Of a DNA stretch of 64,000 nt, positions 3,901 through 53,269 are shown piece after piece. The stretch's first letter is position 1. Each line of letters begins with the position of its first letter. Source of the stretch: Pecten maximus (Eukaryota); contig NC_047020.1 of the NCBI RefSeq assembly GCF_902652985.1, positions 10,912,001 through 10,976,000 on the forward strand. Reading direction: 5' to 3'. The notes beneath the pieces are model-generated. The model had not been told where the DNA came from and did not search any database. It saw nothing but the letters and a program-made list of their open reading frames with translations. The position numbers and the translations under genes are program-made.

Positions 3901-6900
3901 TTCTATTGAAGGATGCAGAATTACTTTTTTTCTCGAAGCTGAATGAATTGGCATTGATACTACGACAAACGGTAGTTTAATTCTTAGATTGGTGGGTTTA
4001 AAATGTCTGTCACATTTCCTGATAAATCACATCACCATTCTCTGCAAGATTCACATAAATTACTTTCCCACAAATATTTTCTACGGTCGGTCATTAAATC
4101 TAATGCAATTTTTTGCGTATATTAATTCATCTTGATCATGATGAAATTAGATTTGATCTTGATAACTTTCATTAGAAGAATCTTGTGGAGTTGTCATGGA
4201 AATTTATTGTTTGTTACTGATGAACTGCCTATCTTATTTATTTCGGTGATTTGTTGAATTGTACATTCATGTTGCATAACAAGCATTTCACTGTTGACTG
4301 CTTTAAATAGGCAACCTCTTTATGGCTATCAAAATCTCTGGTGCAGACACCAGCTAAGTTTCACCTAATGTTCATTTTCGTCCACCACAACCAGCATGGC
4401 CATTTAGTATTTCTTGGAAATGATGCAAAAACCAATTAGAATCAGCCCAAAAATCAGGGCGGAACTTGGGCAGTGTCAAATAGGGTTCGGTTGCTAAAGG
4501 TTGGTTGGCATCAGAACCAAAAAATAGCCAGAGACCTTCAGCTAGCTGAAGTAGCTTGTCGTGTGTAACCGTTGAGTGTACATATGTAATGTTCACATTT
4601 GTTGTTACCATCGCAAGTGCATTTCTTAATGTGTTTTTTAAGACTAAATGGAAAATAAATTTGTTAATTGTTTTAAATATTTTTGTTCATTACAGTATTT
4701 CCTTAAGCTAGCCATTAGCTTAGAACAACTTCATCTAACCTGGGTTTATCTTATTGCAGCAGAATTTTGAAATGAACATGTACGGAAGTGTTAACTACTG
4801 AATATGAATCGAAGTGCATATCAAATTTCAGAACTGATTCATAATTGAAGGTTTCAATTTCAGTGCATAACGTGGGTTAAAAAATTCAAGTCAGTGACCC
4901 TTGACTTGTAAATCCTGGGAGTCAAATTCAAATCCTGAGTGTCAAAATCATAGAATGCCAAGAAGTCAGGAGGTTTTTCTCATCAAACAATTTAGTCAAC
5001 GCCTACTGAACAAGTGTTTGTAATGTTTGTCTCAATGTACACTGGTAACCCTAAAACCTTGAATTTACTCGCGCGAGTTTGAATTTTTCAGTGAAAGTGA
5101 GCGTTTTCAACGTGGCGTGAGTATTTTAAGTGTAATTGAGTATTCTCAGTGTGTCGTTTTTAAATTCAGTATGCCGTTTTTAAATTCAGAGTGCCGTAGA
5201 TCGTTACGCATCAGCGCACTCGACAAGTAGTATAGGATTACCTGTACCGATCGATCGATGAAACGTCCAACACCGCGCGCGACCTCGTGTATCGTACGGT
5301 AGAAATACGTGTTCTTGCAAACGGGAAATATTACTGGAAGCAACATTTATTGCTCTCGGATTTGGACGTTATTCTTTACCCCAGATCAATCGTTATCTAT
5401 TGTAATTACGCCTGTAATTAACCACAACCCACCTATTCCGTTTACTTGCTCCGAGATCGACTGATATTGTCGTGATATTTGATGTACTTGTTTTCGGTAA
5501 TACGGCGGTGGTGTTGTCAAAAAAATACCCATGTTATGATTTACCTCGTATAATGTGAAGTGTTCATATGAGAAAGTGTATTGAAGCAATAAACCGGTTA
5601 CGTTGACTACTGTACATCGTATTTTGTTATTTATTTATAATACTTGACCCGGGCGGGATCCATATGTAATCACTGTGTATTAACTGTGTCAATCTTCCTG
5701 TTTCAGATATATCCATGACTGAGAAGTATCGCCGTTGCTGTATTACGTGTTCAAGAAACCGTCAACACATGTGATGATTGATAAACATGTTAAATGATAC
5801 AATTAAATTGTTAAATCGCCAGTATATTGCATTTTGTTATTTATACTTACCCGGGACGTATCGGAGATGACGTACGTACAGTAGCAGGTAAAGTATTCAA
5901 CGTTTATATTAACTGTTTCAATCTTCTTTTTCAGGTATTCCATGACCCAGGTACAATGACGTTGTTCATCATATTTTCAAGTGGGTTCGAGGATAGAAAC
6001 CTACATCTCATTTATCAATAAAATAGTCATCAGTATTATAATCTATATGCAGTTATATTCATTAGCTTACCTGAAGCAGATCGACGATCCTATCCATTAC
6101 TTGGTAACGGGTGTCTTCAGGTAAGATATATCCTATCACAACACACTGCGTTTAACAGCTATTAAAGCAAAACCCTTCCATTTGTTGTATATGCTATCAA
6201 ACAATATATTTGCTATCAGTGATCCCATGTATGCACGTTGTTGTTTTTTTTTGTAAAAAAAAAAATGTACAAGGGGTCCGCGCGTTAAAAATGACGAATT
6301 CACAACTTTAAAACTAGTTTGATATATTAATTATTTCTTAGACCCTTTTATGTCCGATAAAAATATAGCCTGTCAAATTGTATTGCAGTATTTCAAAGTA
6401 AGAGCCTGTAAACAAATTGTGTATCATGACACGAGATCCGTATTAAATAATAAAAAAGGTCGATTAATATTTACTGAAATAAATGGTGATAATTCGTGTC
6501 GTTTGTAAATGCAGGGACCGTGATACCATACTCCTACATTTGTGTAACCACGGACAGAGCAATTAAAAATCTTAAGTTCCTGATATCTAACATAAAAAGG
6601 CCGCTGATTTTATTTTGTATCCGACCTTATTGGACTGATACCAGTGTGATTAGAACCAACTTCTTGGGATCTAGATAAACTCTACCCTACCGCATTGTCC
6701 CGACAGTAAACGACCAATACCTCTCAAAACGGCCCTTTTCAGGGCCGACTTCTGTTCATGAAACGCAAAAAAAAAAAAAAATGAAAATGCACAACTCAAA
6801 TCTATAGAACTAATATTTCAAAAAGCAAATCGTACGTATTACGTAGTTTCACTCGGGCAACAAACGGTCATTTTTGTACACGTGTTGTTGCAGCAGTACA

Positions 6901-9900
6901 AGATGGAGAATATAACATTTGGTATTAAATTTACTTTATTTTTTATGTTTCTGGTAGCAACAGGATATTTTATATTAGAATAGAAATAAGCAAACTGATG
7001 ATGTGGGACAAACAGCACGACACTTACTTTGCTAGTTACGTGACTCCGCCTATTGATAGATTTCGTCACCTGTCACCGTCTTCCAATGAACACAAGTAGG
7101 CGGAGACGCGGGTTAGTTGACAGGTAGACAGGCGCCAAAGTTATATAAACTAATCCAATTAGACTACACCGCAGGTGGGCGGAGTCACGGATAGATGATC
7201 TGTCATGTCAGATGATCACTTGTCTCAATGATTGTTACATTCAATATTAATGCATTAATTGATCACTTAGAAATTGTATGTATGTATTCATGGTTATGAT
7301 GAATAATGAGTGTTTGTAAGTATTTATTTTTCAGGTTTCAAATTTGAAATTCTGTAATTAACATATCCCACGGACGGTGAAGTGATCTCCAAGGCTGGAT
7401 TCAGTATCAAAATACATCGATACTCGTCCGATTGCAATAAAATGTTGCACGATGTTAGATATAAGTACAATTTGTATGTTGCAGAAAAAAAAATAAACAA
7501 AACATATTAATGAACGAATTCCTTGGCGTGTAAAAGTCACTGGACACCGATATATGTATTTAATTCTATACAATTTTTCATTAAAAGGACGTCAATTTCA
7601 TTTGAATAATTTTTGTAAGATGGGTACGACTTCGCCTATTTCTCTGGGTACGAGTCCGCCAATTTTAGGTACGATTCCGCCAATTTAGGGTACGAGCTTC
7701 TATGAAACATACAGATACATTTACTAGCACCGTGCCAGAAGTGTAATTTTCTTTTTTATACATTTTCCACCTTTTATTTAGTGTTAACTTTTATTCTTTC
7801 ATACAGACAAGACAAAATACAACAAATATCGCTTCAAGACTGAACAGGATATGGACTGTACCTTTACTGAGGAACGATAACGTTTCAGAAAATATATCAA
7901 GTACAATGAATATAACTCTTGTTGCATCAATAATTTATTCTATTGCGCGATAGTTTCAAAATATGGACGATGTATACCATTTCACTGCCTAAATCTTCTG
8001 CTGGATTTTATATATACAAAATGAATAAATGTACTTTGTATCTATTGTGATTGTTACCATGCCGCTAACGATTGCTCTTTCTCAATGTTAATAAAATGAA
8101 AATATAAATTTTCAAATCTATCATATAGCAATTAAAAAAAAAAGAAAAAGACTTTCCGTGAATACAGCATCCAGATGTGAAAAATTTAGAGGATATTGTT
8201 TACACTGACTCTATCTTTGTCTCTATGTTCAATAATTAAAAGCTATTGACGCTATTAGCTTTATTATTATCTAATGATTAAGAAATGATTAACGATGATT
8301 AGTGTATTGTTGCAAGATATACAACGAGGACGAGGATATTTTGCAATTAAATTAATAACTCTGCAGAGGATAATTTGCAATTAAACTAATAACTCTGCTT
8401 ATAACATTAATGTATTACAATGGCCTTACAGACATAAGGGCGTGATATTCTGCAAAGGTAAGTGTGTTTACTCGTGTAACATACAGGTTACGGTATAGTG
8501 TACAGGTGACCGCTCCAGCGTCTGACCGGGTCCACCCAGCCAAACTCGGTCAGTCGTCACTGATGTGTGTTTGTGTCCATGTTTCTGGTAACATATAGGT
8601 TATGGTACATGTATTTTACAGGTCTTCTAGAAGAACTCGCGCAGTGGGAAGTTCGGTTAGGGGATAAACTTCACTGTTTAAAATGATAATCTCAAAGAAA
8701 ACAGTAACCACATGTGTCCATGTAATTAACAATGGGTGACTGGACAGGTGTAAAAGAAGACTGGCACTTTCGGAGTGAAACGGAGAAAAGTAACTCTTAA
8801 TGATGATAATTGCTGTATATTTAAGGAAATCCAAAGGAAGAACGCTGTTATTTTTTTTATATAGTTTGCATTATTATCGTATTTTCTTTCTCTGTATACC
8901 TTTTTTGGTAAAGGTGTTGAGATGAGATGAATCGGGATAAGTACAAACTCACACATATGTTATCCTCATATAAAAGTGCTACCGAAACCAGGGACATATA
9001 ATTTTCTATTATAACAGGCCATATATAACATGTAACATCTTACTATTTTGTTTATTATAACGAGCCGTATACAACATGTAACATCTTACTAATTTTCTTT
9101 TATAACGGGCCAAATACAACGTGTATCCTCTTGCTAATTTTCTATGATTACGGGTCATTAACATTAAAAATTGAATAATTTTCTATTTCAACGGGTCGTT
9201 GTAGCACTTGTTCATGAAAAATTAGTAACTACAAGACAGGATTCATAGAGTAAATTTTCAACATCGTGGTTATGTGAATGAGCCAAATTTTTGGTTAATT
9301 ATTCTATAGGCAAACTTTTGAGATACGAATTTGTTTTGCTTGTAGGGAAAACGAAACTCACTGAATTCCAAAAATATATCTTCGGAACTTTTTTGAAGTG
9401 CATGGAAACCTCACGTGTGAACTCACAAGTAATTATCGGCATGTGCCGATTAGAACCTGAACGCCAGAAATCACAGACACCTGTGGTGCAGTGACAGGTG
9501 TTATAAGCTTGTGGACCGTAATTTCTCACCTGGTAATTGTTTAGCGGTATACTAACCAACCCAAACTTGAGGATTCGTAATTCTCCGAACATGCTGGTAT
9601 AATTTTTCTAATTCCTGTTTTAAGAGAAGACATGACTTGCGACACACGAATGGAAAGTAAAACACAAGGATCTCAATCACTTCACGATAATTACACAATT
9701 ACTAAAAGAAAAGAAAGATAAATAAATGAAAAAACGAAATAAAAGGAAAAATACACTTTAACCATTGCGAGTTTAATAATTTTAGTATTAATTATGATTA
9801 GTCACGATGAACTAAATTGTATGTTTTTTATCACACGAAAAAACGGAACTAAAATTATGGTTTTAACAAGTCTCTGTGATATGTACCTGTACGTATTGAC

Positions 9901-12900
9901 CAATACTATTATAATTGTTGCCAAGCACTTTTATATAATTTCACTTTCAACGATCGTATATAAATTATATCTTTCTCAAGCATTTAATCGTCGGTAATCC
10001 CTGGGACCATGACATGTAACATAAGGGATAAGATCTGTATGATTATAAGCAAGTTGTAGGCTCAAACACTGGTTTTCATACGGAAGAGATACTAGTCTGT
10101 TGTAGATCATGATGAATCTATATAAAATTTAACTTTCTGAATTAGGTGTCCTTCATGACTAAAAGCGGGTTTTGCATAGATTATAATGCATAAGTTTACA
10201 GTATGTGTGTATCGTCTCACAAACCAGAATATCCAGAACTGTTGTATTTTAAAATGACACATTATTTTATTTAAATAATGTTGATGCCGTGTTCCTTTTT
10301 ATAGTAATGAGTAAGACATAACCAATATACATTTATTTATGATTGACCGATTATCAGATCGTGTATAACATCTGTATTTCCCTGGTATAACACATCAGTC
10401 TGTGTTACCCAAACGGTCATTTCAGAGTCCATTTCACAACAAATTAATCTCTTAAAAGCTCAAATTGATATTGTTGGATTCCAAGTTCTTGTCAGCAATA
10501 TTCACCAAATTCATCAACCCTAAATCTCGTATCCAGATCATATGTGAAAAGAGAATAAAATGAAGTTGAATTTGAATCTTCAGACTGGTCTGTGTTACTA
10601 CTGTCCACGCTGTCTATACTGCAGGCCACCATTTCAGTTACTCCGTTAAACCTGTACATCAATCAATCAAACAAAAAACGATGGTCTATTATAATCTGAA
10701 ATTCTAATCTGAAAGCAGCGCACACGATGTTTTGTCAGTGAACATATTAAATAAAACAGTCAATTGGTCATATATCTATAAGCCTGATCGTCAGAAGAAT
10801 TGATCTCGTAGCATTACAGCAGTGCTGCTACTGAAACATGTGCACAACATGTGTGTAAGGCTACCTCACGAAAGGTGGGTCCACACACCAAAAGTTAACT
10901 GACCCCGTCAGGCACAAGCTTTTCACCGAAGACCTCATCCCCGGGGCATTAATTAGAATATAATTAGCGGCAGTATACCGAACTCGATGAATTTCGTAAA
11001 TACCTGTTTACCTGGGAAGTGTCCAGTTGACCTGCTGACCTAGCGGTGTCCTGGGGCGTTGATTAATTAGTCGTTGACATGCCTGACTTGCCTATGATTT
11101 GTTGCATTGGCCAGTTTACCTGGGTATCTCACCTGTGCACAATATTATCGGTTTCATGAATAAAACAGATCACATGACACGTTAGTCTCTCTGTACTGAC
11201 ACTATGCAGACGAATCTGTATTGGTTTACTTGAGTAATTAATAGCCGTGGATATCGATATTATAAAAACATGTCAAAGTTATTATCAAAACACATGTCAC
11301 CAAAGTTAAGTTCTTTATTACTTTAAGCCTTTCGGCTCATCCGAAGACATGTGAATATACCTAATATAACAAAAGCATTGATTACTTTCGCACCACACCC
11401 ACACCGACAAAAGACCTGTCCAAGTACCAGGCAGTCTTCATCCAGGCCGGAGAGAATGATGTAATGGACAGTACATCGGCTGAAATCAAAACAACCACCA
11501 TTCGAATCTATGACGTTTTGATTGCCCAGGGAGTTAACCAAGTATGTTTCCACGTCATGATCGGACCTTCAACAAACGGGTTATTACACACCTGACTCTA
11601 AAGATGGAATTTGCCTTCTCCAACAGCGGATACTGCAGTAACAATGGAAGGAAGATAGAAGTCAGTCGCGTTGATTCGTCTATAGCTACACTATAATGAC
11701 GGCCCTTTTCAGGACCACCAAAAACACTCGAAAAACATCCAGCACTCGAATTTATGCAATAAAAACAACTATTATATATTTATTGCAAATGTTTATATAT
11801 ATAAAAACAATATATCAATTACCGAGTCGGTATCTATAATTGGGATAATTACGTCCACACATTACAGTTTCTGTAATGGCCGCCTTCCATAACATGATGC
11901 GCAGGGATTCGAAATTCTATCAATACTCAAGGTTCATATTTGAAATTTCTTAAAACGTATGAGTTTTCTTCTGCTTGGGGATATAATGAAATATATGAGA
12001 TATGTTCAGTGGCAAATGTTGTTGTGAACGTGAATTTTGGCGACTTTGAAAATTGACATAAATTCCACACATAGTTTCTGTAATAGCCGCCTTCCATAAC
12101 ATGATGCGCGGGGTTCGAAATTCTATCAATACTCGAGGTTCATATTTGAAATTTGTTTAAACGTCTGAATTTTCTTCTGCTTGAGAGTATAATGAAAATC
12201 AAGTATGTAACTGTTGTATTTGTACTTATATTTGGGAACGTTATTTCAACACTGAAGCTCGTACTTTGGAACGACTTCCTAAAAACAGGTTGTTGTGTCA
12301 AATTCGAATAATTCAAAGTTGTGATAAACGTTGTCCCGAATCCCTTTTGCCAACACCAAATCTTGATATTCTATATAAAAAGTGTTGCGTTGACAATTAA
12401 ATACAAGTCCCCGTGGGGTTTACACAGGTCGACAAAGAGACACGACCGCCCATCTTACAAATTCCATGGTACGATTAAATACATTGGATACAAAATATCC
12501 GGGTTAGTAGTTGGACACTTATTTCTTTGTATATATATTGTTTGATAACATATACAACAAATGGAAGGGTTTTGCTTTAATAGCTGTTAAACGCAGTGTG
12601 TTGATAGGATATATCTTACCTGAAGACACCCGTTAATGGATAGGATCGTCGATCTGCTCCAGGTAAGCTAATGAATATAACTGCATATAGATATACTGCT
12701 GATGACTATTTTATTGATTAATGAGATGTACGTTTCTATTCTCGAACCCACTTGAAAATATGATGAAGAACAACGTCATTCTACCTGGGTCATGGAATAC
12801 CTGAAAGAGAAGATTGAAACAGTTAATATAAACGTTGAATACTTTACCTGCTACTGTACGTACGTCATCTCCGATACGTCCCGGGTAAGTATAAATAACA

Positions 12901-14875
12901 AAATGCAATATACTGGCGATATAACAATTTAATTGTATCATTAAACATGTTTATCAATCATCACATGTGGTGACGGTTTCTTGAACACGTAATACAGCAA
13001 CGGCGATACTTCTCAGTTATGGATATCTGAAACAGGAAGATTGACACAGTTAATACACAGTGATTACATATGGATCCCGCCCGGGTCAAGTATTATAAAT
13101 AAATAACAAAATACGATGTACAGTAGTCAACGTAACCGGTTTATTGCTTCAATACACTTTCTCATATGAACACTTCACATTATACGGGGTAAATCATAAC
13201 ATGGGTATTTTTTGGCAACACCACCGCCGTATTACCGAAAACAAGTACATCAAATATCACGACAATATCAGTCGATCTCGGAGCAAGTAAACGGAATAGG
13301 TGGGTTGTGATTAATTACAGGCGTAATTACAATATATAACGATTGATCAGGGGTAAAGAATAATGTCCAAATCCGAGAGCAATAAATGTTGCTTCCAGTA
13401 ATATTTCCCGTTTGCAAGAACACGTATTTCTACCGTACGATACACGAGGTCGCGCGCGGTGTTGGACGTTTCATCGATCGATCGGTACAGGTAATCCTAT
13501 ACTACTTGTCGAGTGCGCTGATGCGTAACGACCCACGGCACTCTGAATTTAAAAACGGCATACTGAATTTAAAAACGACACACTGAGAATACTCAATTAT
13601 ACTTAAAATACTCACGCCACGTTGAAAACGCTCACTTTCACTGAAAAATTCAAACTCGCGCGAGTAAATTCAAGGTTTTAGGGTTACCAGTGGTAGTTAT
13701 CTTTTCTTTTATCTAATTACAAGTTTTGAAATTTACCAAAAAGACTAGAGCATCAGCATTTTATAAATACTGCCATCCGATATGTCATATGTTTGTAATT
13801 TTTATGAAAATATTTCTTCTTTCATAATTTGAGGTAACATGAGCTGATGATCGGACACTGACCAGAAGTAGACAAACTATTTGTCAGAGCTTCGAATTCC
13901 ATCTTAGTATAGATGTCTTGTCCGAATCTGTTTATCTGTTGATATCTCGCGGGAAATCTCATTAGCATCAATTTATTTTGATTTCGATTCCTTATAAAGA
14001 AATAGACCTTTACGCTTGTATCAAAGATGGCGGTATGTTTGAACTGATATCTCTGTGTGTCTTGCTCGTTTTGGATTTTACTATTTATTGTCAAACATTT
14101 GACTTAATGTGCAGGTTTGTGGATTGAATATTGATATTAATAGATACCAGAATCTTCTATTTATATGTGTTTTTTTTATCCAAAAAAATTATAACCACAG
14201 CTAAATACTGCTCGATGTGAATCACATCGGCGCTTGCTACACTATCGGCAATGCCGATTATGGGAGGGACTTCATACCCTGTCGGAGAGCAATGTAGGCA
14301 GGGTATGAATATTCGTTCTATCTTAATATTAGCCAAGTCAATAATATGTTTTTTTTTTTTTTTTTTTTATAATGACAGAAAAAAAACAAATATTTCCTGC
14401 CCCTCTGTTCTCATCACACCCATTTTGATCAGTTACATGATATATAATATACATACATAATGTGTTAGTCTAATTTGAATGTATTTATTTGTTAACATTT
14501 AGATATATGGCAAACCCAGGAGTCCTACACAGAAAATTAAGTGACATCTCAAAAAAGTAGGTCAACTCATTCACATGTGTAAATAAACAACGTCAACCGA
14601 CATAAATAACCAATTTAGAACAAACATTATAAATTATATAATACAGCAGAAACAACATATTTAATTGCTTATATATTAAGAACTGTTCGACATTTACGTT
14701 TTTTTTCTAAAAATGAAACCGACTACCGACTCGTTGTTTCCATCTCGTGCTTATCATTGAAGATCACCATAATAACAATATCTGTACACTGCATAGTGTA
14801 TGTATTGCAATGTGTAAATCTAGTTATCGTATAATAAATATTTACCTTATCACCTGGTATTCCTCTCGATCCCAT
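913..14875 (-). CDS. UBL3: Ubiquitin-like protein 3, 5' part (coding exons 14875-14846 and 1021-913; remaining exons lie left of the window)
   Basis: Spliced translation MGSRGIPGDK|INLRLILVSGKSKEFLFTPNESAADITELVYNNWPT closely matches the UBL3/MUB N-terminus (INLRLILVSGKTKEFLF..N.SA..I...VY.NWP). Canonical gtaaat donor, polypyrimidine-tag acceptor, phase-0 join, 13.8-kb intron. Not in the ORF track because the exons are short. Confidence 0.93.
2260..2597 (+). pseudogene. Truncated BED-finger transposase N-terminus
   Basis: SxVWxxF...CxxC...NTTNMxxHL motif; the final His is replaced and the ORF ends early. Confidence 0.75.
3250..3345. repeat. Perfect palindrome, 47-bp arms, 2-nt loop
   Basis: gtaaataaaatcattg...tcatataat GA attatatga...ttttatttac. 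Confidence 0.9.
5040..6209 (+). repeat. Left TIR of the CACTG element
   Basis: Reverse complement of 12533-13692 with scattered substitutions and small indels. Confidence 0.92.
6731..6746 (+). promoter_or_regulatory. Histone-mRNA-type 3' stem-loop (perfect)
   Basis: AAAAC GGCCCT TTTC AGGGCC matches the metazoan SLBP-binding consensus GGYYYU UUUC ARRRCC with an A-rich 5' flank. Confidence 0.7.
10030..10652 (-). pseudogene. Decayed Kolobok accessory protein KolX / P2X7 C-terminal-like fragment
   Basis: Minus-strand translation across stops and frameshifts gives an acidic Ser-rich stretch, then LGIQQYQFE (cf. IxPYxFEP), NDRLGNTD*C (cf. RLGNTDWC) and PVFEPTTCL (cf. HPGFxxVCL). Confidence 0.55.
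11365..11696 (+). pseudogene. Decayed SGNH/GDSL hydrolase fragment
   Basis: The frame from 11365 reads ...KDLSKYQAVFIQAGENDVMDSTSAEIKTTTIRIYDVLIAQGVNQVCF (block III hydrophobic-GxND). At 11603-11633 gatggaatttgccttctccaacagcggatac reads DGI(x)(L/F)SNSGY with one frameshift (block V DGxHxxxxGY). Confidence 0.6.
11701..11720 (+). promoter_or_regulatory. Histone-mRNA-type 3' stem-loop (one mismatch) with ACCA tail
   Basis: GGCCCT TTTC AGGACC ACCA, immediately after TAA TGA closing the SGNH remnant. Confidence 0.6.
11854..12198. repeat. Diverged ~210-bp direct duplication
   Basis: tccacacat..agtttctgtaat(g/a)gccgccttccataacatgatgcgc..ttcgaaattctatcaatactc at 11854 and 12064. Confidence 0.8.
12533..13692 (-). 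repeat. Right TIR of the CACTG element
   Basis: Reverse complement of 5040-6209. Confidence 0.92.
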
Positions 14876-52886: not shown

Positions 52887-53269
52887 TGCTGTGTAAATTG
52901 GACTGGGTTGATCATTGGCAACAAGATAGCTCAGTTGGTAGCTATATAGAGTGTCCGTCTAGAGTTTGGAAGGTCCCGGGTTCGAACCCCATTCTGGCTG
53001 CTTCATTTGCTCGTTCTCCTATTACATAATTGGCGAGCTTGCCAACCCTTATTTAAAGTATGGGGAGTATGCTTAGCAAGGGCCGATATTTGAACTTGTG
53101 GTCTTTGGTAGCGAAGACTTGAAAAAAGGAGGGAGAAATGTAGCGGAACTCGACTGGGTTGATCATCTGCGACCAGGTAGCTCAGTTGGTAGAGTGTCTG
53201 TCTAGAGTTCGGAGGGTCCCGGGTTCGAACCCCGGTCTGGCTGCTACATTTTCTCTTTCCCCTGTTACA
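52887..53269 (+). mobile_element. Complete TRIM (383 bp) with tRNA-derived LTRs (Helenus-type)
   Basis: 5' LTR 52887-53026, PBS tggcgagcttgcca from 53031, PPT gaaaaaaggagggagaaa 53121-53138, 3' LTR 53139-53269 (TGTA...TACA). ATTG on both flanks. Each LTR carries TAGCTCAGTTGGTAG (A box) and GGTTCGAACCC (B box). Confidence 0.85.

What the first reader, a model, noticed from the sequence alone, without database searches (positions are those of the whole stretch)
6700..11730. Two histone-mRNA 3' stem-loops on non-histone cargo inside a DNA transposon
Seen: GGCCCTTTTCAGGGCC at 6731-6746 (A-rich 5' flank, ~22 nt after a TAA closing a decayed frame ...WDLDKLYPTALSRQ*) and GGCCCTTTTCAGGACC-ACCA at 11701-11720 (right after the stop of an SGNH remnant). 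Both are on the same strand, 5 kb apart, inside one CACTG element, with no histone coding sequence recognisable nearby. Established: this 16-nt hairpin is the SLBP-bound end of replication-dependent histone mRNAs and is normally confined to them. Inference: the ancestral element, or a virus-like donor of its cargo, ended its own genes with histone-type stem-loops to exploit SLBP/U7 processing and S-phase or early-embryo expression without poly(A). I see no convincing purine-rich U7-binding downstream element, which weakens the functional claim. This is my best candidate for an undescribed system in the window.
Basis: partly seen in the sequence, partly recalled or inferred. Interest (0 to 1): 0.78.

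Follow-up and report, generated by a model that had tools for sequence, protein, structure and literature searches.

The report
Dead histone-type hairpins inside a transposon
The two histone-mRNA-style hairpins are real, but here they are inert leftovers carried by a cut-and-paste transposon; one of them comes from a scallop family of small esterase genes that do seem to end like histone genes.

Summary
Observation confirmed. GGCCCTTTTCAGGGCC lies at 6731-6746 and GGCCCTTTTCAGGACC+ACCA at 11701-11720, both on the + strand. Both sit inside one 8,653-bp non-autonomous CACTG element (5040-13692) with 1.17-kb inverted ends and a 3-bp target duplication. The genome holds about 25-33 copies at 96-100% identity.

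The element has no genes of its own. HSL2 is the native 3' end of a captured SGNH-esterase pseudogene that has lost its 5' part, carries a frameshift and has an internal deletion. Its stem has a C·A mismatch in every copy, and no U7-binding downstream element follows. HSL1 is an orphan tail with no coding homology. It lacks the ACCCA flank and the downstream element, and it is broken in three relatives.

The donor family is the interesting part. At least 129 SGNH reading frames, mostly open, occur in this genome, and at least 25 are followed by a stem-loop. The members examined closely end in a stem-loop, a CAAAAAG element and a CTCGAAAAtACGC motif, as the host's histone genes do. The same holds in 3 of 3 Mizuhopecten yessoensis paralogues, but not in the Pinctada, Mytilus or Owenia homologues I checked.

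The best-studied subfamily sits next to a Tpt1-like gene with the same tail, inside a Mutator-like transposon. This scan reported that system earlier on other DNA (s1-787418). RNA 3' ends could not be tested.

The parts
5040..13692 (.). Non-autonomous CACTG (CACTA/EnSpm-like) DNA transposon, 8,653 bp, with no intact gene
   Evidence: Inverted repeats. Six full copies of 8,648-8,658 bp, each with its own 3-bp target duplication. At least 25 copies at 93-100% identity. 66 terminal-repeat candidates in the genome.
5037..5039 (.). Target-site duplication GTA, left copy (the right copy is at 13693-13695)
   Evidence: The other copies show TAA, TAT, AAA, AAT and TCA.
5040..6209 (+). Left terminal inverted repeat, about 1.17 kb, starting CACTGGTAACCC
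   Evidence: pairs I1-I6 and I8, 93-99% complementary.
12533..13692 (-). Right terminal inverted repeat
6259..6880 (+). Cargo block around HSL1. It has an independent 89.5% relative outside the element family (C11, L055), without the terminal repeat
   Evidence: No coding homology to the SGNH, Tpt1-like, HTH, coiled-coil or histone proteins.
6731..6746 (+). HSL1: perfect histone-type stem-loop with an AAAAC 5' flank. The 3' flank is GACTT, not ACCCA, and there is no downstream element
   Evidence: (22.3 bits). Its tail from 6701 to 6830 is 62% identical to the tail of the L043-type SGNH gene, E=3e-6. It is altered in L004, L011 and L051.
6767..6781 (+). A-run (A15 here, variable in other copies) starting 20 nt after HSL1
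   Evidence: It could be the poly(A) of a retro-copied read-through transcript. This was not tested.
11407..11696 (+). SGNH esterase pseudogene fragment. The GxND block is kept in the frame at 11365-11592 and the tail in the frame at 11538-11693. About 97 N-terminal residues and about 33 internal residues are missing
   Evidence: Family HMM E=1e-11. tblastn to the intact L049 protein E=1.9e-14, residues 98-207 of 218. 83-87% DNA identity to L048, with a 100-nt deletion. Pfam itself gives no hit.
11701..11720 (+). HSL2 plus ACCA. The third stem pair is a C·A mismatch, identical in all 12 copies examined
   Evidence: (17.9 bits).
11721..11866 (+). 3' flank captured together with the SGNH gene. 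It contains two CTCGAA-type motifs (11727-11736, 11745-11757) but no CAAAAAG element
   Evidence: Homology to L048 continues 150 nt past the hairpin. Motif comparison.

Best explanation
The two hairpins are inert relics that spread passively with a young, non-autonomous CACTA-type DNA transposon that carries fragments of other genes. HSL2 is the original 3' end of an SGNH esterase gene fragment that the element picked up together with about 150 nt of 3' flank. The fragment is a pseudogene, its hairpin has a broken pair, and no U7-binding element follows. HSL1 is the tail of another stem-loop-bearing gene or transcript whose body is no longer recognisable. The source genes belong to a large scallop family of small, intronless SGNH esterase genes. 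Their intact members end in the full three-part signal of the host's histone genes: a stem-loop with ACCCA, then CAAAAAG, then CTCGAAAAtACGC. The inference is that their pre-mRNAs are cleaved by SLBP and U7 snRNP and are not polyadenylated. The best-studied subfamily sits with a Tpt1-like gene carrying the same tail inside a Mutator-like transposon. Shown: the anatomy, the homology, the copy history and the conservation of the signal. Inferred: that the signal is used, and what it achieves.
For: Element structure and mobility. Homology of the pseudogene and its flank. Decay of the two hairpins. Donor family: at least 129 SGNH matches, mostly open frames, at 21-100% identity. At least 25 of them lie 10-60 nt (in a few cases up to about 300 nt) upstream of a stem-loop, by cross-reading. 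Intact examples are L043, L049 and L050; L052 also carries the signal after a frame that appears broken near its end. The exact 16-mer occurs 190 times in the genome against 3 for the reversed control. The signal is present in 3 of 3 Mizuhopecten yessoensis paralogues and in one further contig from a public run. Of 120 stem cells, 119 are paired, and compensatory C-G to U-A changes occur at two positions; the one unpaired cell is the window's HSL2. The SGNH and Tpt1-like genes lie beside a 1015-aa PHD/MULE-like frame at six loci, and divergent relatives show the same neighbourhood.
Against: No RNA 3' end was seen. Only assembled contigs were available, and the one contig from a declared RNA library (X3) runs through the hairpin to +80 nt, which could be DNA, precursor or read-through. 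No U7 gene was found, so complementarity to CAAAAAG is untested (a heuristic search). The origin of HSL1 rests on a weak 62% match over 130 nt. The gene most like the donor (L048) itself lacks a clear CAAAAAG element and may be another fragment. The MULE domain hit is below Pfam's cut-off (21-23 bits against 27.6).
Confidence: 0.8

Rival explanations
1. One reading: the CACTG element, or its direct ancestor, ends its own functional genes with histone-type stem-loops, and these two hairpins still act as SLBP/U7 processing sites.
For: Both hairpins are on one strand inside one mobile element and are unchanged in most copies.
Against: The copies are 96-100% identical overall, so their conservation says nothing. 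There is no intact frame. The SGNH piece lacks its catalytic N-terminal block and is frameshifted. HSL2 has a stem mismatch, and neither hairpin has a CAAAAAG element. HSL1 is altered in L004, L011 and L051.
Confidence: 0.04
2. The hairpins are tails of captured histone pseudogenes.
For: The 16-mer of HSL1 is identical to that of the H2A, H2B and H3 genes of the cluster, and the AAAAC flank is shared.
Against: There is no similarity to H2A, H2B or H3 coding sequence anywhere in the element. Matches to the histone loci cover only the 20-32-nt hairpin core for HSL1, and the hairpin plus about 45-50 nt of shared 3' motif for HSL2. HSL2's flanks align over about 470 nt to an SGNH gene, and HSL1's tail aligns over 130 nt to an SGNH gene tail.
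Confidence: 0.08
3. The stem-loop module behind the SGNH, Tpt1-like and other genes is a passenger, not a working processing site. It would be a fragment of histone 3' flank that was repeatedly copied or gene-converted next to these genes, for example by the Mutator-like elements, while the mRNAs end at ordinary poly(A) sites.
For: The module includes a third motif (CTCGAAAAtACGC) of unknown role, and it also occurs in tandem arrays without genes, which suggests recombination-prone DNA. The RNA-library contig crosses the hairpin. Homologues in Pinctada, Mytilus and Owenia do without it.
Against: The module is kept within 10-60 nt of the stop codon in paralogues that share only 21-34% protein identity, and in two scallop genera. 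The stem shows compensatory changes. The CAAAAAG element keeps its spacing.
Confidence: 0.3

Closest known systems
3' end of replication-dependent histone mRNAs (stem-loop bound by SLBP, downstream element bound by U7 snRNP; Rfam RF00032)
   Same: HSL1 has the same 16-nt hairpin as the host's histone genes. The intact donor genes share the whole three-part architecture of the host's H2A, H2B and H3 genes.
   Different: The upstream genes are not histones. The two copies in the window score below Rfam's threshold and lack the downstream element, and HSL2 has a broken pair.
Gene-fragment-carrying ('Pack'-type) non-autonomous DNA transposons such as Pack-MULEs and Pack-CACTA (named from my own knowledge)
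   Same: Terminal inverted repeats and a target duplication enclose non-coding cargo that includes a fragment of a gene with an independent homologue elsewhere in the genome.
   Different: The inverted ends are unusually long (1.17 kb). Only one cargo fragment could be traced to a gene. No autonomous partner was identified.
Earlier finding of this scan, s1-787418: an SGNH esterase gene on Mutator-like transposons in scallops, followed by histone 3'-end signals
   Same: It concerns the same gene family, the same signal and the same genome. I reproduced the link to a MULE-like frame independently.
   Different: The window holds only dead fragments of that system inside an unrelated CACTA-type element. 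New here: a Tpt1-like gene and two further small gene families with the same tail, the Mizuhopecten cases, and the lack of the signal in three non-pectinid homologues.
SGNH/esterase reading frames of mobile elements (ORF1 of CR1/L2-type LINEs, extra ORF of Ngaro elements; named from my own knowledge, not tested here)
   Same: Both are small SGNH-fold proteins encoded by mobile DNA in animals. The profile search finds 1,633 cluster representatives, mostly 170-240 aa.
   Different: Here the gene stands alone with its own TATA-like box and a histone-type 3' end, beside a DNA-transposon frame. It is not part of a retroelement transcript.

Membership tests
Histone 3' UTR stem-loop (Rfam RF00032) | Score at or above the family's gathering score (34 bits) | tested here: not met
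   HSL1 scores 22.3 bits and HSL2 17.9 bits. Neither is listed at gathering threshold. Histone genes and intact SGNH genes of the same genome score 33-40 bits.
Histone 3' UTR stem-loop (Rfam RF00032) | 6-bp stem with a GG base, a 4-nt U-rich loop and an A-rich 5' flank | tested here: met
   HSL1 meets it fully. HSL2 meets it except for one C·A mismatch at pair 3.
Histone 3' UTR stem-loop (Rfam RF00032) | ACCCA-type 3' flank and a purine-rich downstream element 10-20 nt further on | tested here: not met
   HSL1 has GACTT and no CAAAAAG. HSL2 has ACCAAAAAC but no CAAAAAG.
Histone 3' UTR stem-loop (Rfam RF00032) | Follows a replication-dependent histone coding sequence | tested here: not met
   tblastn with the host's H2A, H2B and H3 proteins finds nothing in the element. 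H4 and H1 were not tested.
CACTA/EnSpm (CMC) DNA transposons | CACTA/CACTG termini in inverted orientation | tested here: met
   CACTGGTAACC... at 5040 and ...GGTTACCAGTG at 13692.
CACTA/EnSpm (CMC) DNA transposons | 3-bp target-site duplication | tested here: met
   Six of six complete copies have one, each with a different triplet.
CACTA/EnSpm (CMC) DNA transposons | A superfamily transposase in the element or in an autonomous partner with the same ends | tested here: inconclusive
   The element has no long frame. All 40 scored matches to its ends belong to copies of about 8.3-8.7 kb, plus one 16.6-kb copy on C11 that was not examined.
SGNH/GDSL hydrolase (Pfam PF13472) | The four conserved blocks: Ser (here GHSF), Gly, GxND and DxxH | tested here: not met
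   The window fragment keeps only GxND (AGEND) and part of the last block (THL). Pfam gives no hit, and only the family-specific profile matches, over positions 46-95 of 175. Among the members examined, L043 passes the Pfam cut-off (39.4 bits against 32.9) and shows all blocks; L049 scores only 14.9 bits and L052 24.9 bits, though L049 and L050 show the blocks in the alignment.
Mutator-like (MULE) transposon, for the donor element at C14:11.974-11.986 Mb | MULE transposase domain and terminal inverted repeats | tested here: inconclusive
   The 1015-aa frame has a PHD finger above cut-off, but a MULE hit of only 21 bits against 27.6. A 340-nt left-end segment recurs in inverted orientation in a tandem array at the right side. 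Target duplications were not examined.

The most novel reading that the evidence does not exclude
Pectinid scallops have several non-histone gene families whose mRNAs are made by the histone pathway (SLBP/U7 cleavage, no poly(A) tail). The families are the SGNH esterase and Tpt1-like genes that ride on Mutator-like transposons, a Tc5-type HTH family and a coiled-coil family. They would be the first non-histone users of that pathway, perhaps tying expression of transposon accessory genes to S phase or to the egg. The window's hairpins are fossils of that system, spread further by a second, unrelated transposon.
Probability: 0.5. Interest if true: 0.85.

Novelty: new variant of a known kind. Interest (0 to 1): 0.55.

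Why it matters
From my own knowledge, the accepted view is that in animals the stem-loop 3' end is confined to replication-dependent histone mRNAs. My searches of the held library found no paper reporting otherwise. The two hairpins in this window have no function of their own. Tracing them, however, shows that this scallop genome attaches the full histone signal to at least four unrelated small-gene families, some of them carried by transposons. If those signals are used, they offer a natural test of what the histone 3' end alone confers on an mRNA, such as S-phase coupling or maternal storage. They would also show how mobile DNA can borrow it. For annotation, stem-loop hits in pectinid genomes cannot be taken as markers of histone genes: about 25-33 of the 190 exact sites are simply copies of this element.

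Tried and rejected
- **Pfam on the frames in the element:** no meaningful hit. The SGNH remnant showed up only with a profile built from family members.
- **blastx of the element against the first SGNH subfamily:** nothing significant. The donor belongs to another subfamily, found through a search of the window's own genome.
- **Homology between the two upstream flanks:** none beyond the hairpin. They are not duplicates of each other.
- **Coding origin of HSL1:** no match to the SGNH, Tpt1-like, HTH, coiled-coil, transposase-like or histone proteins.
- **RNA evidence:** all runs on offer were assembled contigs. Pieces cover the SGNH gene of L046, and one contig from an RNA library crosses the hairpin. 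Contigs cannot show ends, so this is inconclusive. The reads were laid on the intact donor gene, not on the window.
- **U7 snRNA:** no match in the heuristic whole-genome search, so pairing with CAAAAAG was not checked.
- **Identity of the coiled-coil family:** Pfam and the protein atlas gave nothing beyond 'molluscan hypothetical protein'.
- **Literature:** five full-text searches found no report of stem-loops on non-histone gene families. Much of the literature is outside that library.
- **Fetching many dispersed sites at once:** The count of SGNH genes with a stem-loop is a lower bound.
Full report
**1. The observation**

A degenerate stem-loop pattern finds exactly these two sites in 64 kb, against 0.02 expected from shuffles.

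Rfam's Histone3 model recognises both, but below its gathering score of 34 bits: 22.3 bits for 6726-6770 and 17.9 bits for 11696-11742. At gathering threshold the window yields only a tRNA.

- HSL1 has a perfect stem, a UUUC loop and an AAAAC 5' flank, but GACUU where histone genes have ACCCA.
- HSL2 has ACCA, but its third stem pair is a C·A mismatch.

**2. The element**

Inverted arms at 5040-6209 and 12533-13692 (93-99% complementary) begin with CACTGG and are flanked by a GTA duplication. Six complete copies of 8,648-8,658 bp elsewhere in the genome each have a different 3-bp duplication.

The genome holds at least 25 copies at 93-100% identity and 66 matches to the terminal repeat. This is a young, mobile, non-autonomous CACTA-type element. 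No reading frame in it exceeds about 100 codons, and none has a convincing Pfam match.

**3. HSL2**

A search of the window's own genome with the 76-codon frame at 11365-11592 found, besides the element's copies, open frames of 148-247 codons at other loci. Three were read.

- L049 (218 aa) and L050 (185 aa) are intact small proteins with the SGNH blocks GHSF, G, GxND and DGxHL.
- L048 is 83-87% identical in DNA to window 11407-11866. The homology runs through the stop codon, the hairpin and 150 nt beyond it.
- A profile of the family matches the window frame at E=1e-11, and tblastn with L049 gives E=1.9e-14 over residues 98-207 of 218.

Compared with L048, the window copy lacks the N-terminal part, has a frameshift near 11540-11590 and has lost 100 nt, which removes most of the last catalytic block. 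It also has one hairpin where L048 has two in tandem.

The G-to-A change that breaks the stem is present in all 12 copies examined. It therefore arose before the element multiplied and was not selected against.

**4. HSL1**

No protein homology was found upstream of it. The stretch 6701-6830 resembles the tail of the L043-type SGNH gene weakly (62% over 130 nt, E=3e-6). The host's histone loci match only the 20-32-nt hairpin core.

A relative of 6259-6880 lies on C11 without the terminal repeat (89.5% identity, L055) and keeps the hairpin. In an 81% relative (L051) the 5' arm has lost two bases. Copy L004 has a substitution at the stem-loop junction, and L011 has a 17-nt duplication.

An A-run of variable length starts 20 nt after the hairpin. 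This would fit a retro-copied, polyadenylated read-through transcript, but that was not tested.

**5. The donor system**

Rfam's model finds the histone clusters of this genome, and it also finds dispersed sites above threshold. The exact 16-mer, with any loop base except G at the fourth loop position, occurs 190 times against 3 for the reversed control.

One dispersed site (L043) has an intact 174-aa SGNH frame ending 19 nt before a stem-loop. It passes Pfam PF13472 at 39.4 bits against a cut-off of 32.9.

That protein has at least 129 matches in the genome at 21-100% identity, most with open frames. Cross-reading the coordinates shows at least 25 of them with a stem-loop just downstream. These include paralogues that share under 35% identity.

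The 3' regions of these genes and of the H2A, H2B and H3 genes share one architecture:

- AAAAC, then the stem-loop, then ACCCA or ACCAA;
- 5-8 nt further on, (Y)CAAAAAG;
- 10-20 nt further on, CTCGAAAA(t)ACGC.

Of 120 stem cells in 20 sequences, 119 are paired, and compensatory C-G to U-A changes occur at two positions. The single unpaired cell is the window's HSL2.

**6. Other genes with the same tail**

- A Tpt1/KptA-family frame (PF01885, E=2.4e-21) in L046 and L054.
- A frame with a Tc5-type HTH domain, just under Pfam's cut-off, in L056.
- A family of 133-163-aa proteins with no Pfam domain, which I call coiled-coil from the look of the sequence only (untested), in L053, L058 and L061.

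**7. Carrier**

At six loci the SGNH gene lies within a few kb of a frame of up to 1015 aa, and at four of these the Tpt1-like gene lies between them. That frame has a PHD finger and a weak MULE domain. Divergent versions (33-43% identity) show the same neighbourhood.

In the joined locus C14:11973300-11986300, a 340-nt left-end segment recurs in inverted orientation in a tandem array at the right. It encloses the long frame (minus strand) and the Tpt1-like and SGNH genes (plus strand). No stem-loop follows the long frame.

This agrees with the earlier follow-up s1-787418, which I had not seen when I found the family.

**8. Distribution**

The closest database proteins are from Mizuhopecten yessoensis at 52-62% identity. 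Three of three of its paralogues that I fetched carry the stem-loop, a CAAAAAG-like element and the CTCGAA motif, as does one contig from a public run.

Homologues from Pinctada imbricata, Mytilus edulis and Owenia fusiformis and one metagenomic contig do not. That is one locus each, so this is only a hint that the signal was acquired within scallops.

The profile search shows that the small SGNH family itself is large, with 1,633 cluster representatives. The genome size (918 Mb in 3,983 pieces) and these relatives point to a pectinid, probably Pecten maximus. The species name rests on my memory of that assembly's statistics.

**9. RNA**

Only assembled contigs were on offer. Contigs from four runs cover parts of the SGNH gene in L046. 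The one from a declared RNA library spans the stop codon and the hairpin and continues 80 nt beyond. Contigs cannot show RNA ends, and DNA carry-over is possible, so use of the signal remains inferred.

**10. Verdict**

The hairpins in the window are dead cargo, not a device of this element.

I found no published description of that system. It is the real point of interest, and this scan has already reported it on other DNA.

Noticed in passing
L046:221-834 (C14:11981020-11981633); also L054: An intact Tpt1/KptA-family (RNA 2'-phosphotransferase) frame ends 13 nt before a full histone-type signal (stem-loop, AAAAAGT, CTCGAAAAATACGC). It is followed by 4.4 copies of a 58-nt repeat that begins with the CTCGAA motif.
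   Followed up: partly
L056:500-1065 (C18:17000009-17000574): A 164-codon frame with a Tc5/pogo-type HTH domain (22.1 bits against a cut-off of 22.2) ends 10 nt before a stem-loop with a CAAAAAG element and the CTCGAA-type motif. The Rfam score is 39.4 bits.
   Followed up: partly
L053, L058, L061 (C8:19.436 Mb, C16:6.105 Mb, C4:2.374 Mb); Rfam hits cluster at C16:6.09-6.11 Mb: A family of 133-163-aa proteins with no Pfam domain, possibly coiled-coil with an acidic tail, is also followed by histone-type signals. Two members have the compensated stem GGCTCT/AGAGCC.
   Followed up: partly
L028:1506-1760 and C14:7208815-7208983: Tandem arrays of four to five stem-loops, each followed by a CTCGAATTACGC-like motif at a period of about 45 nt, with no reading frame between them. 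The role of this third motif is unknown. It is shared by histone and non-histone genes in both scallop genera.
   Followed up: no
L069 joined to L046 (C14:11973300-11986300): A large (over 11 kb) Mutator-like element. It has a 1015-aa frame (PHD finger, weak OTU and MULE hits) on the minus strand and the Tpt1-like and SGNH genes on the plus strand. A 39-nt satellite lies between them, and the right end is built of tandem copies of the left-end sequence.
   Followed up: partly
C11:31331023-31347687 (not fetched): One copy of the window's CACTG element spans 16.6 kb instead of 8.65 kb, with about 8 kb extra between the positions equivalent to window 6731 and 7127. It could be a nested insertion or a longer relative.
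   Followed up: no
window 53171-53243: A tRNA gene (Rfam 43.3 bits) is the only Rfam match above threshold in the window. It lies within another note of the scan (s1-789280).
   Followed up: no
L064 (Owenia fusiformis), just downstream of the SGNH homologue: As read by eye, the sequence after the annelid SGNH homologue translates into something resembling the N-terminal core-binding domain of a tyrosine recombinase. That hints that the family rides on other kinds of mobile elements outside scallops. This was not tested.
   Followed up: no
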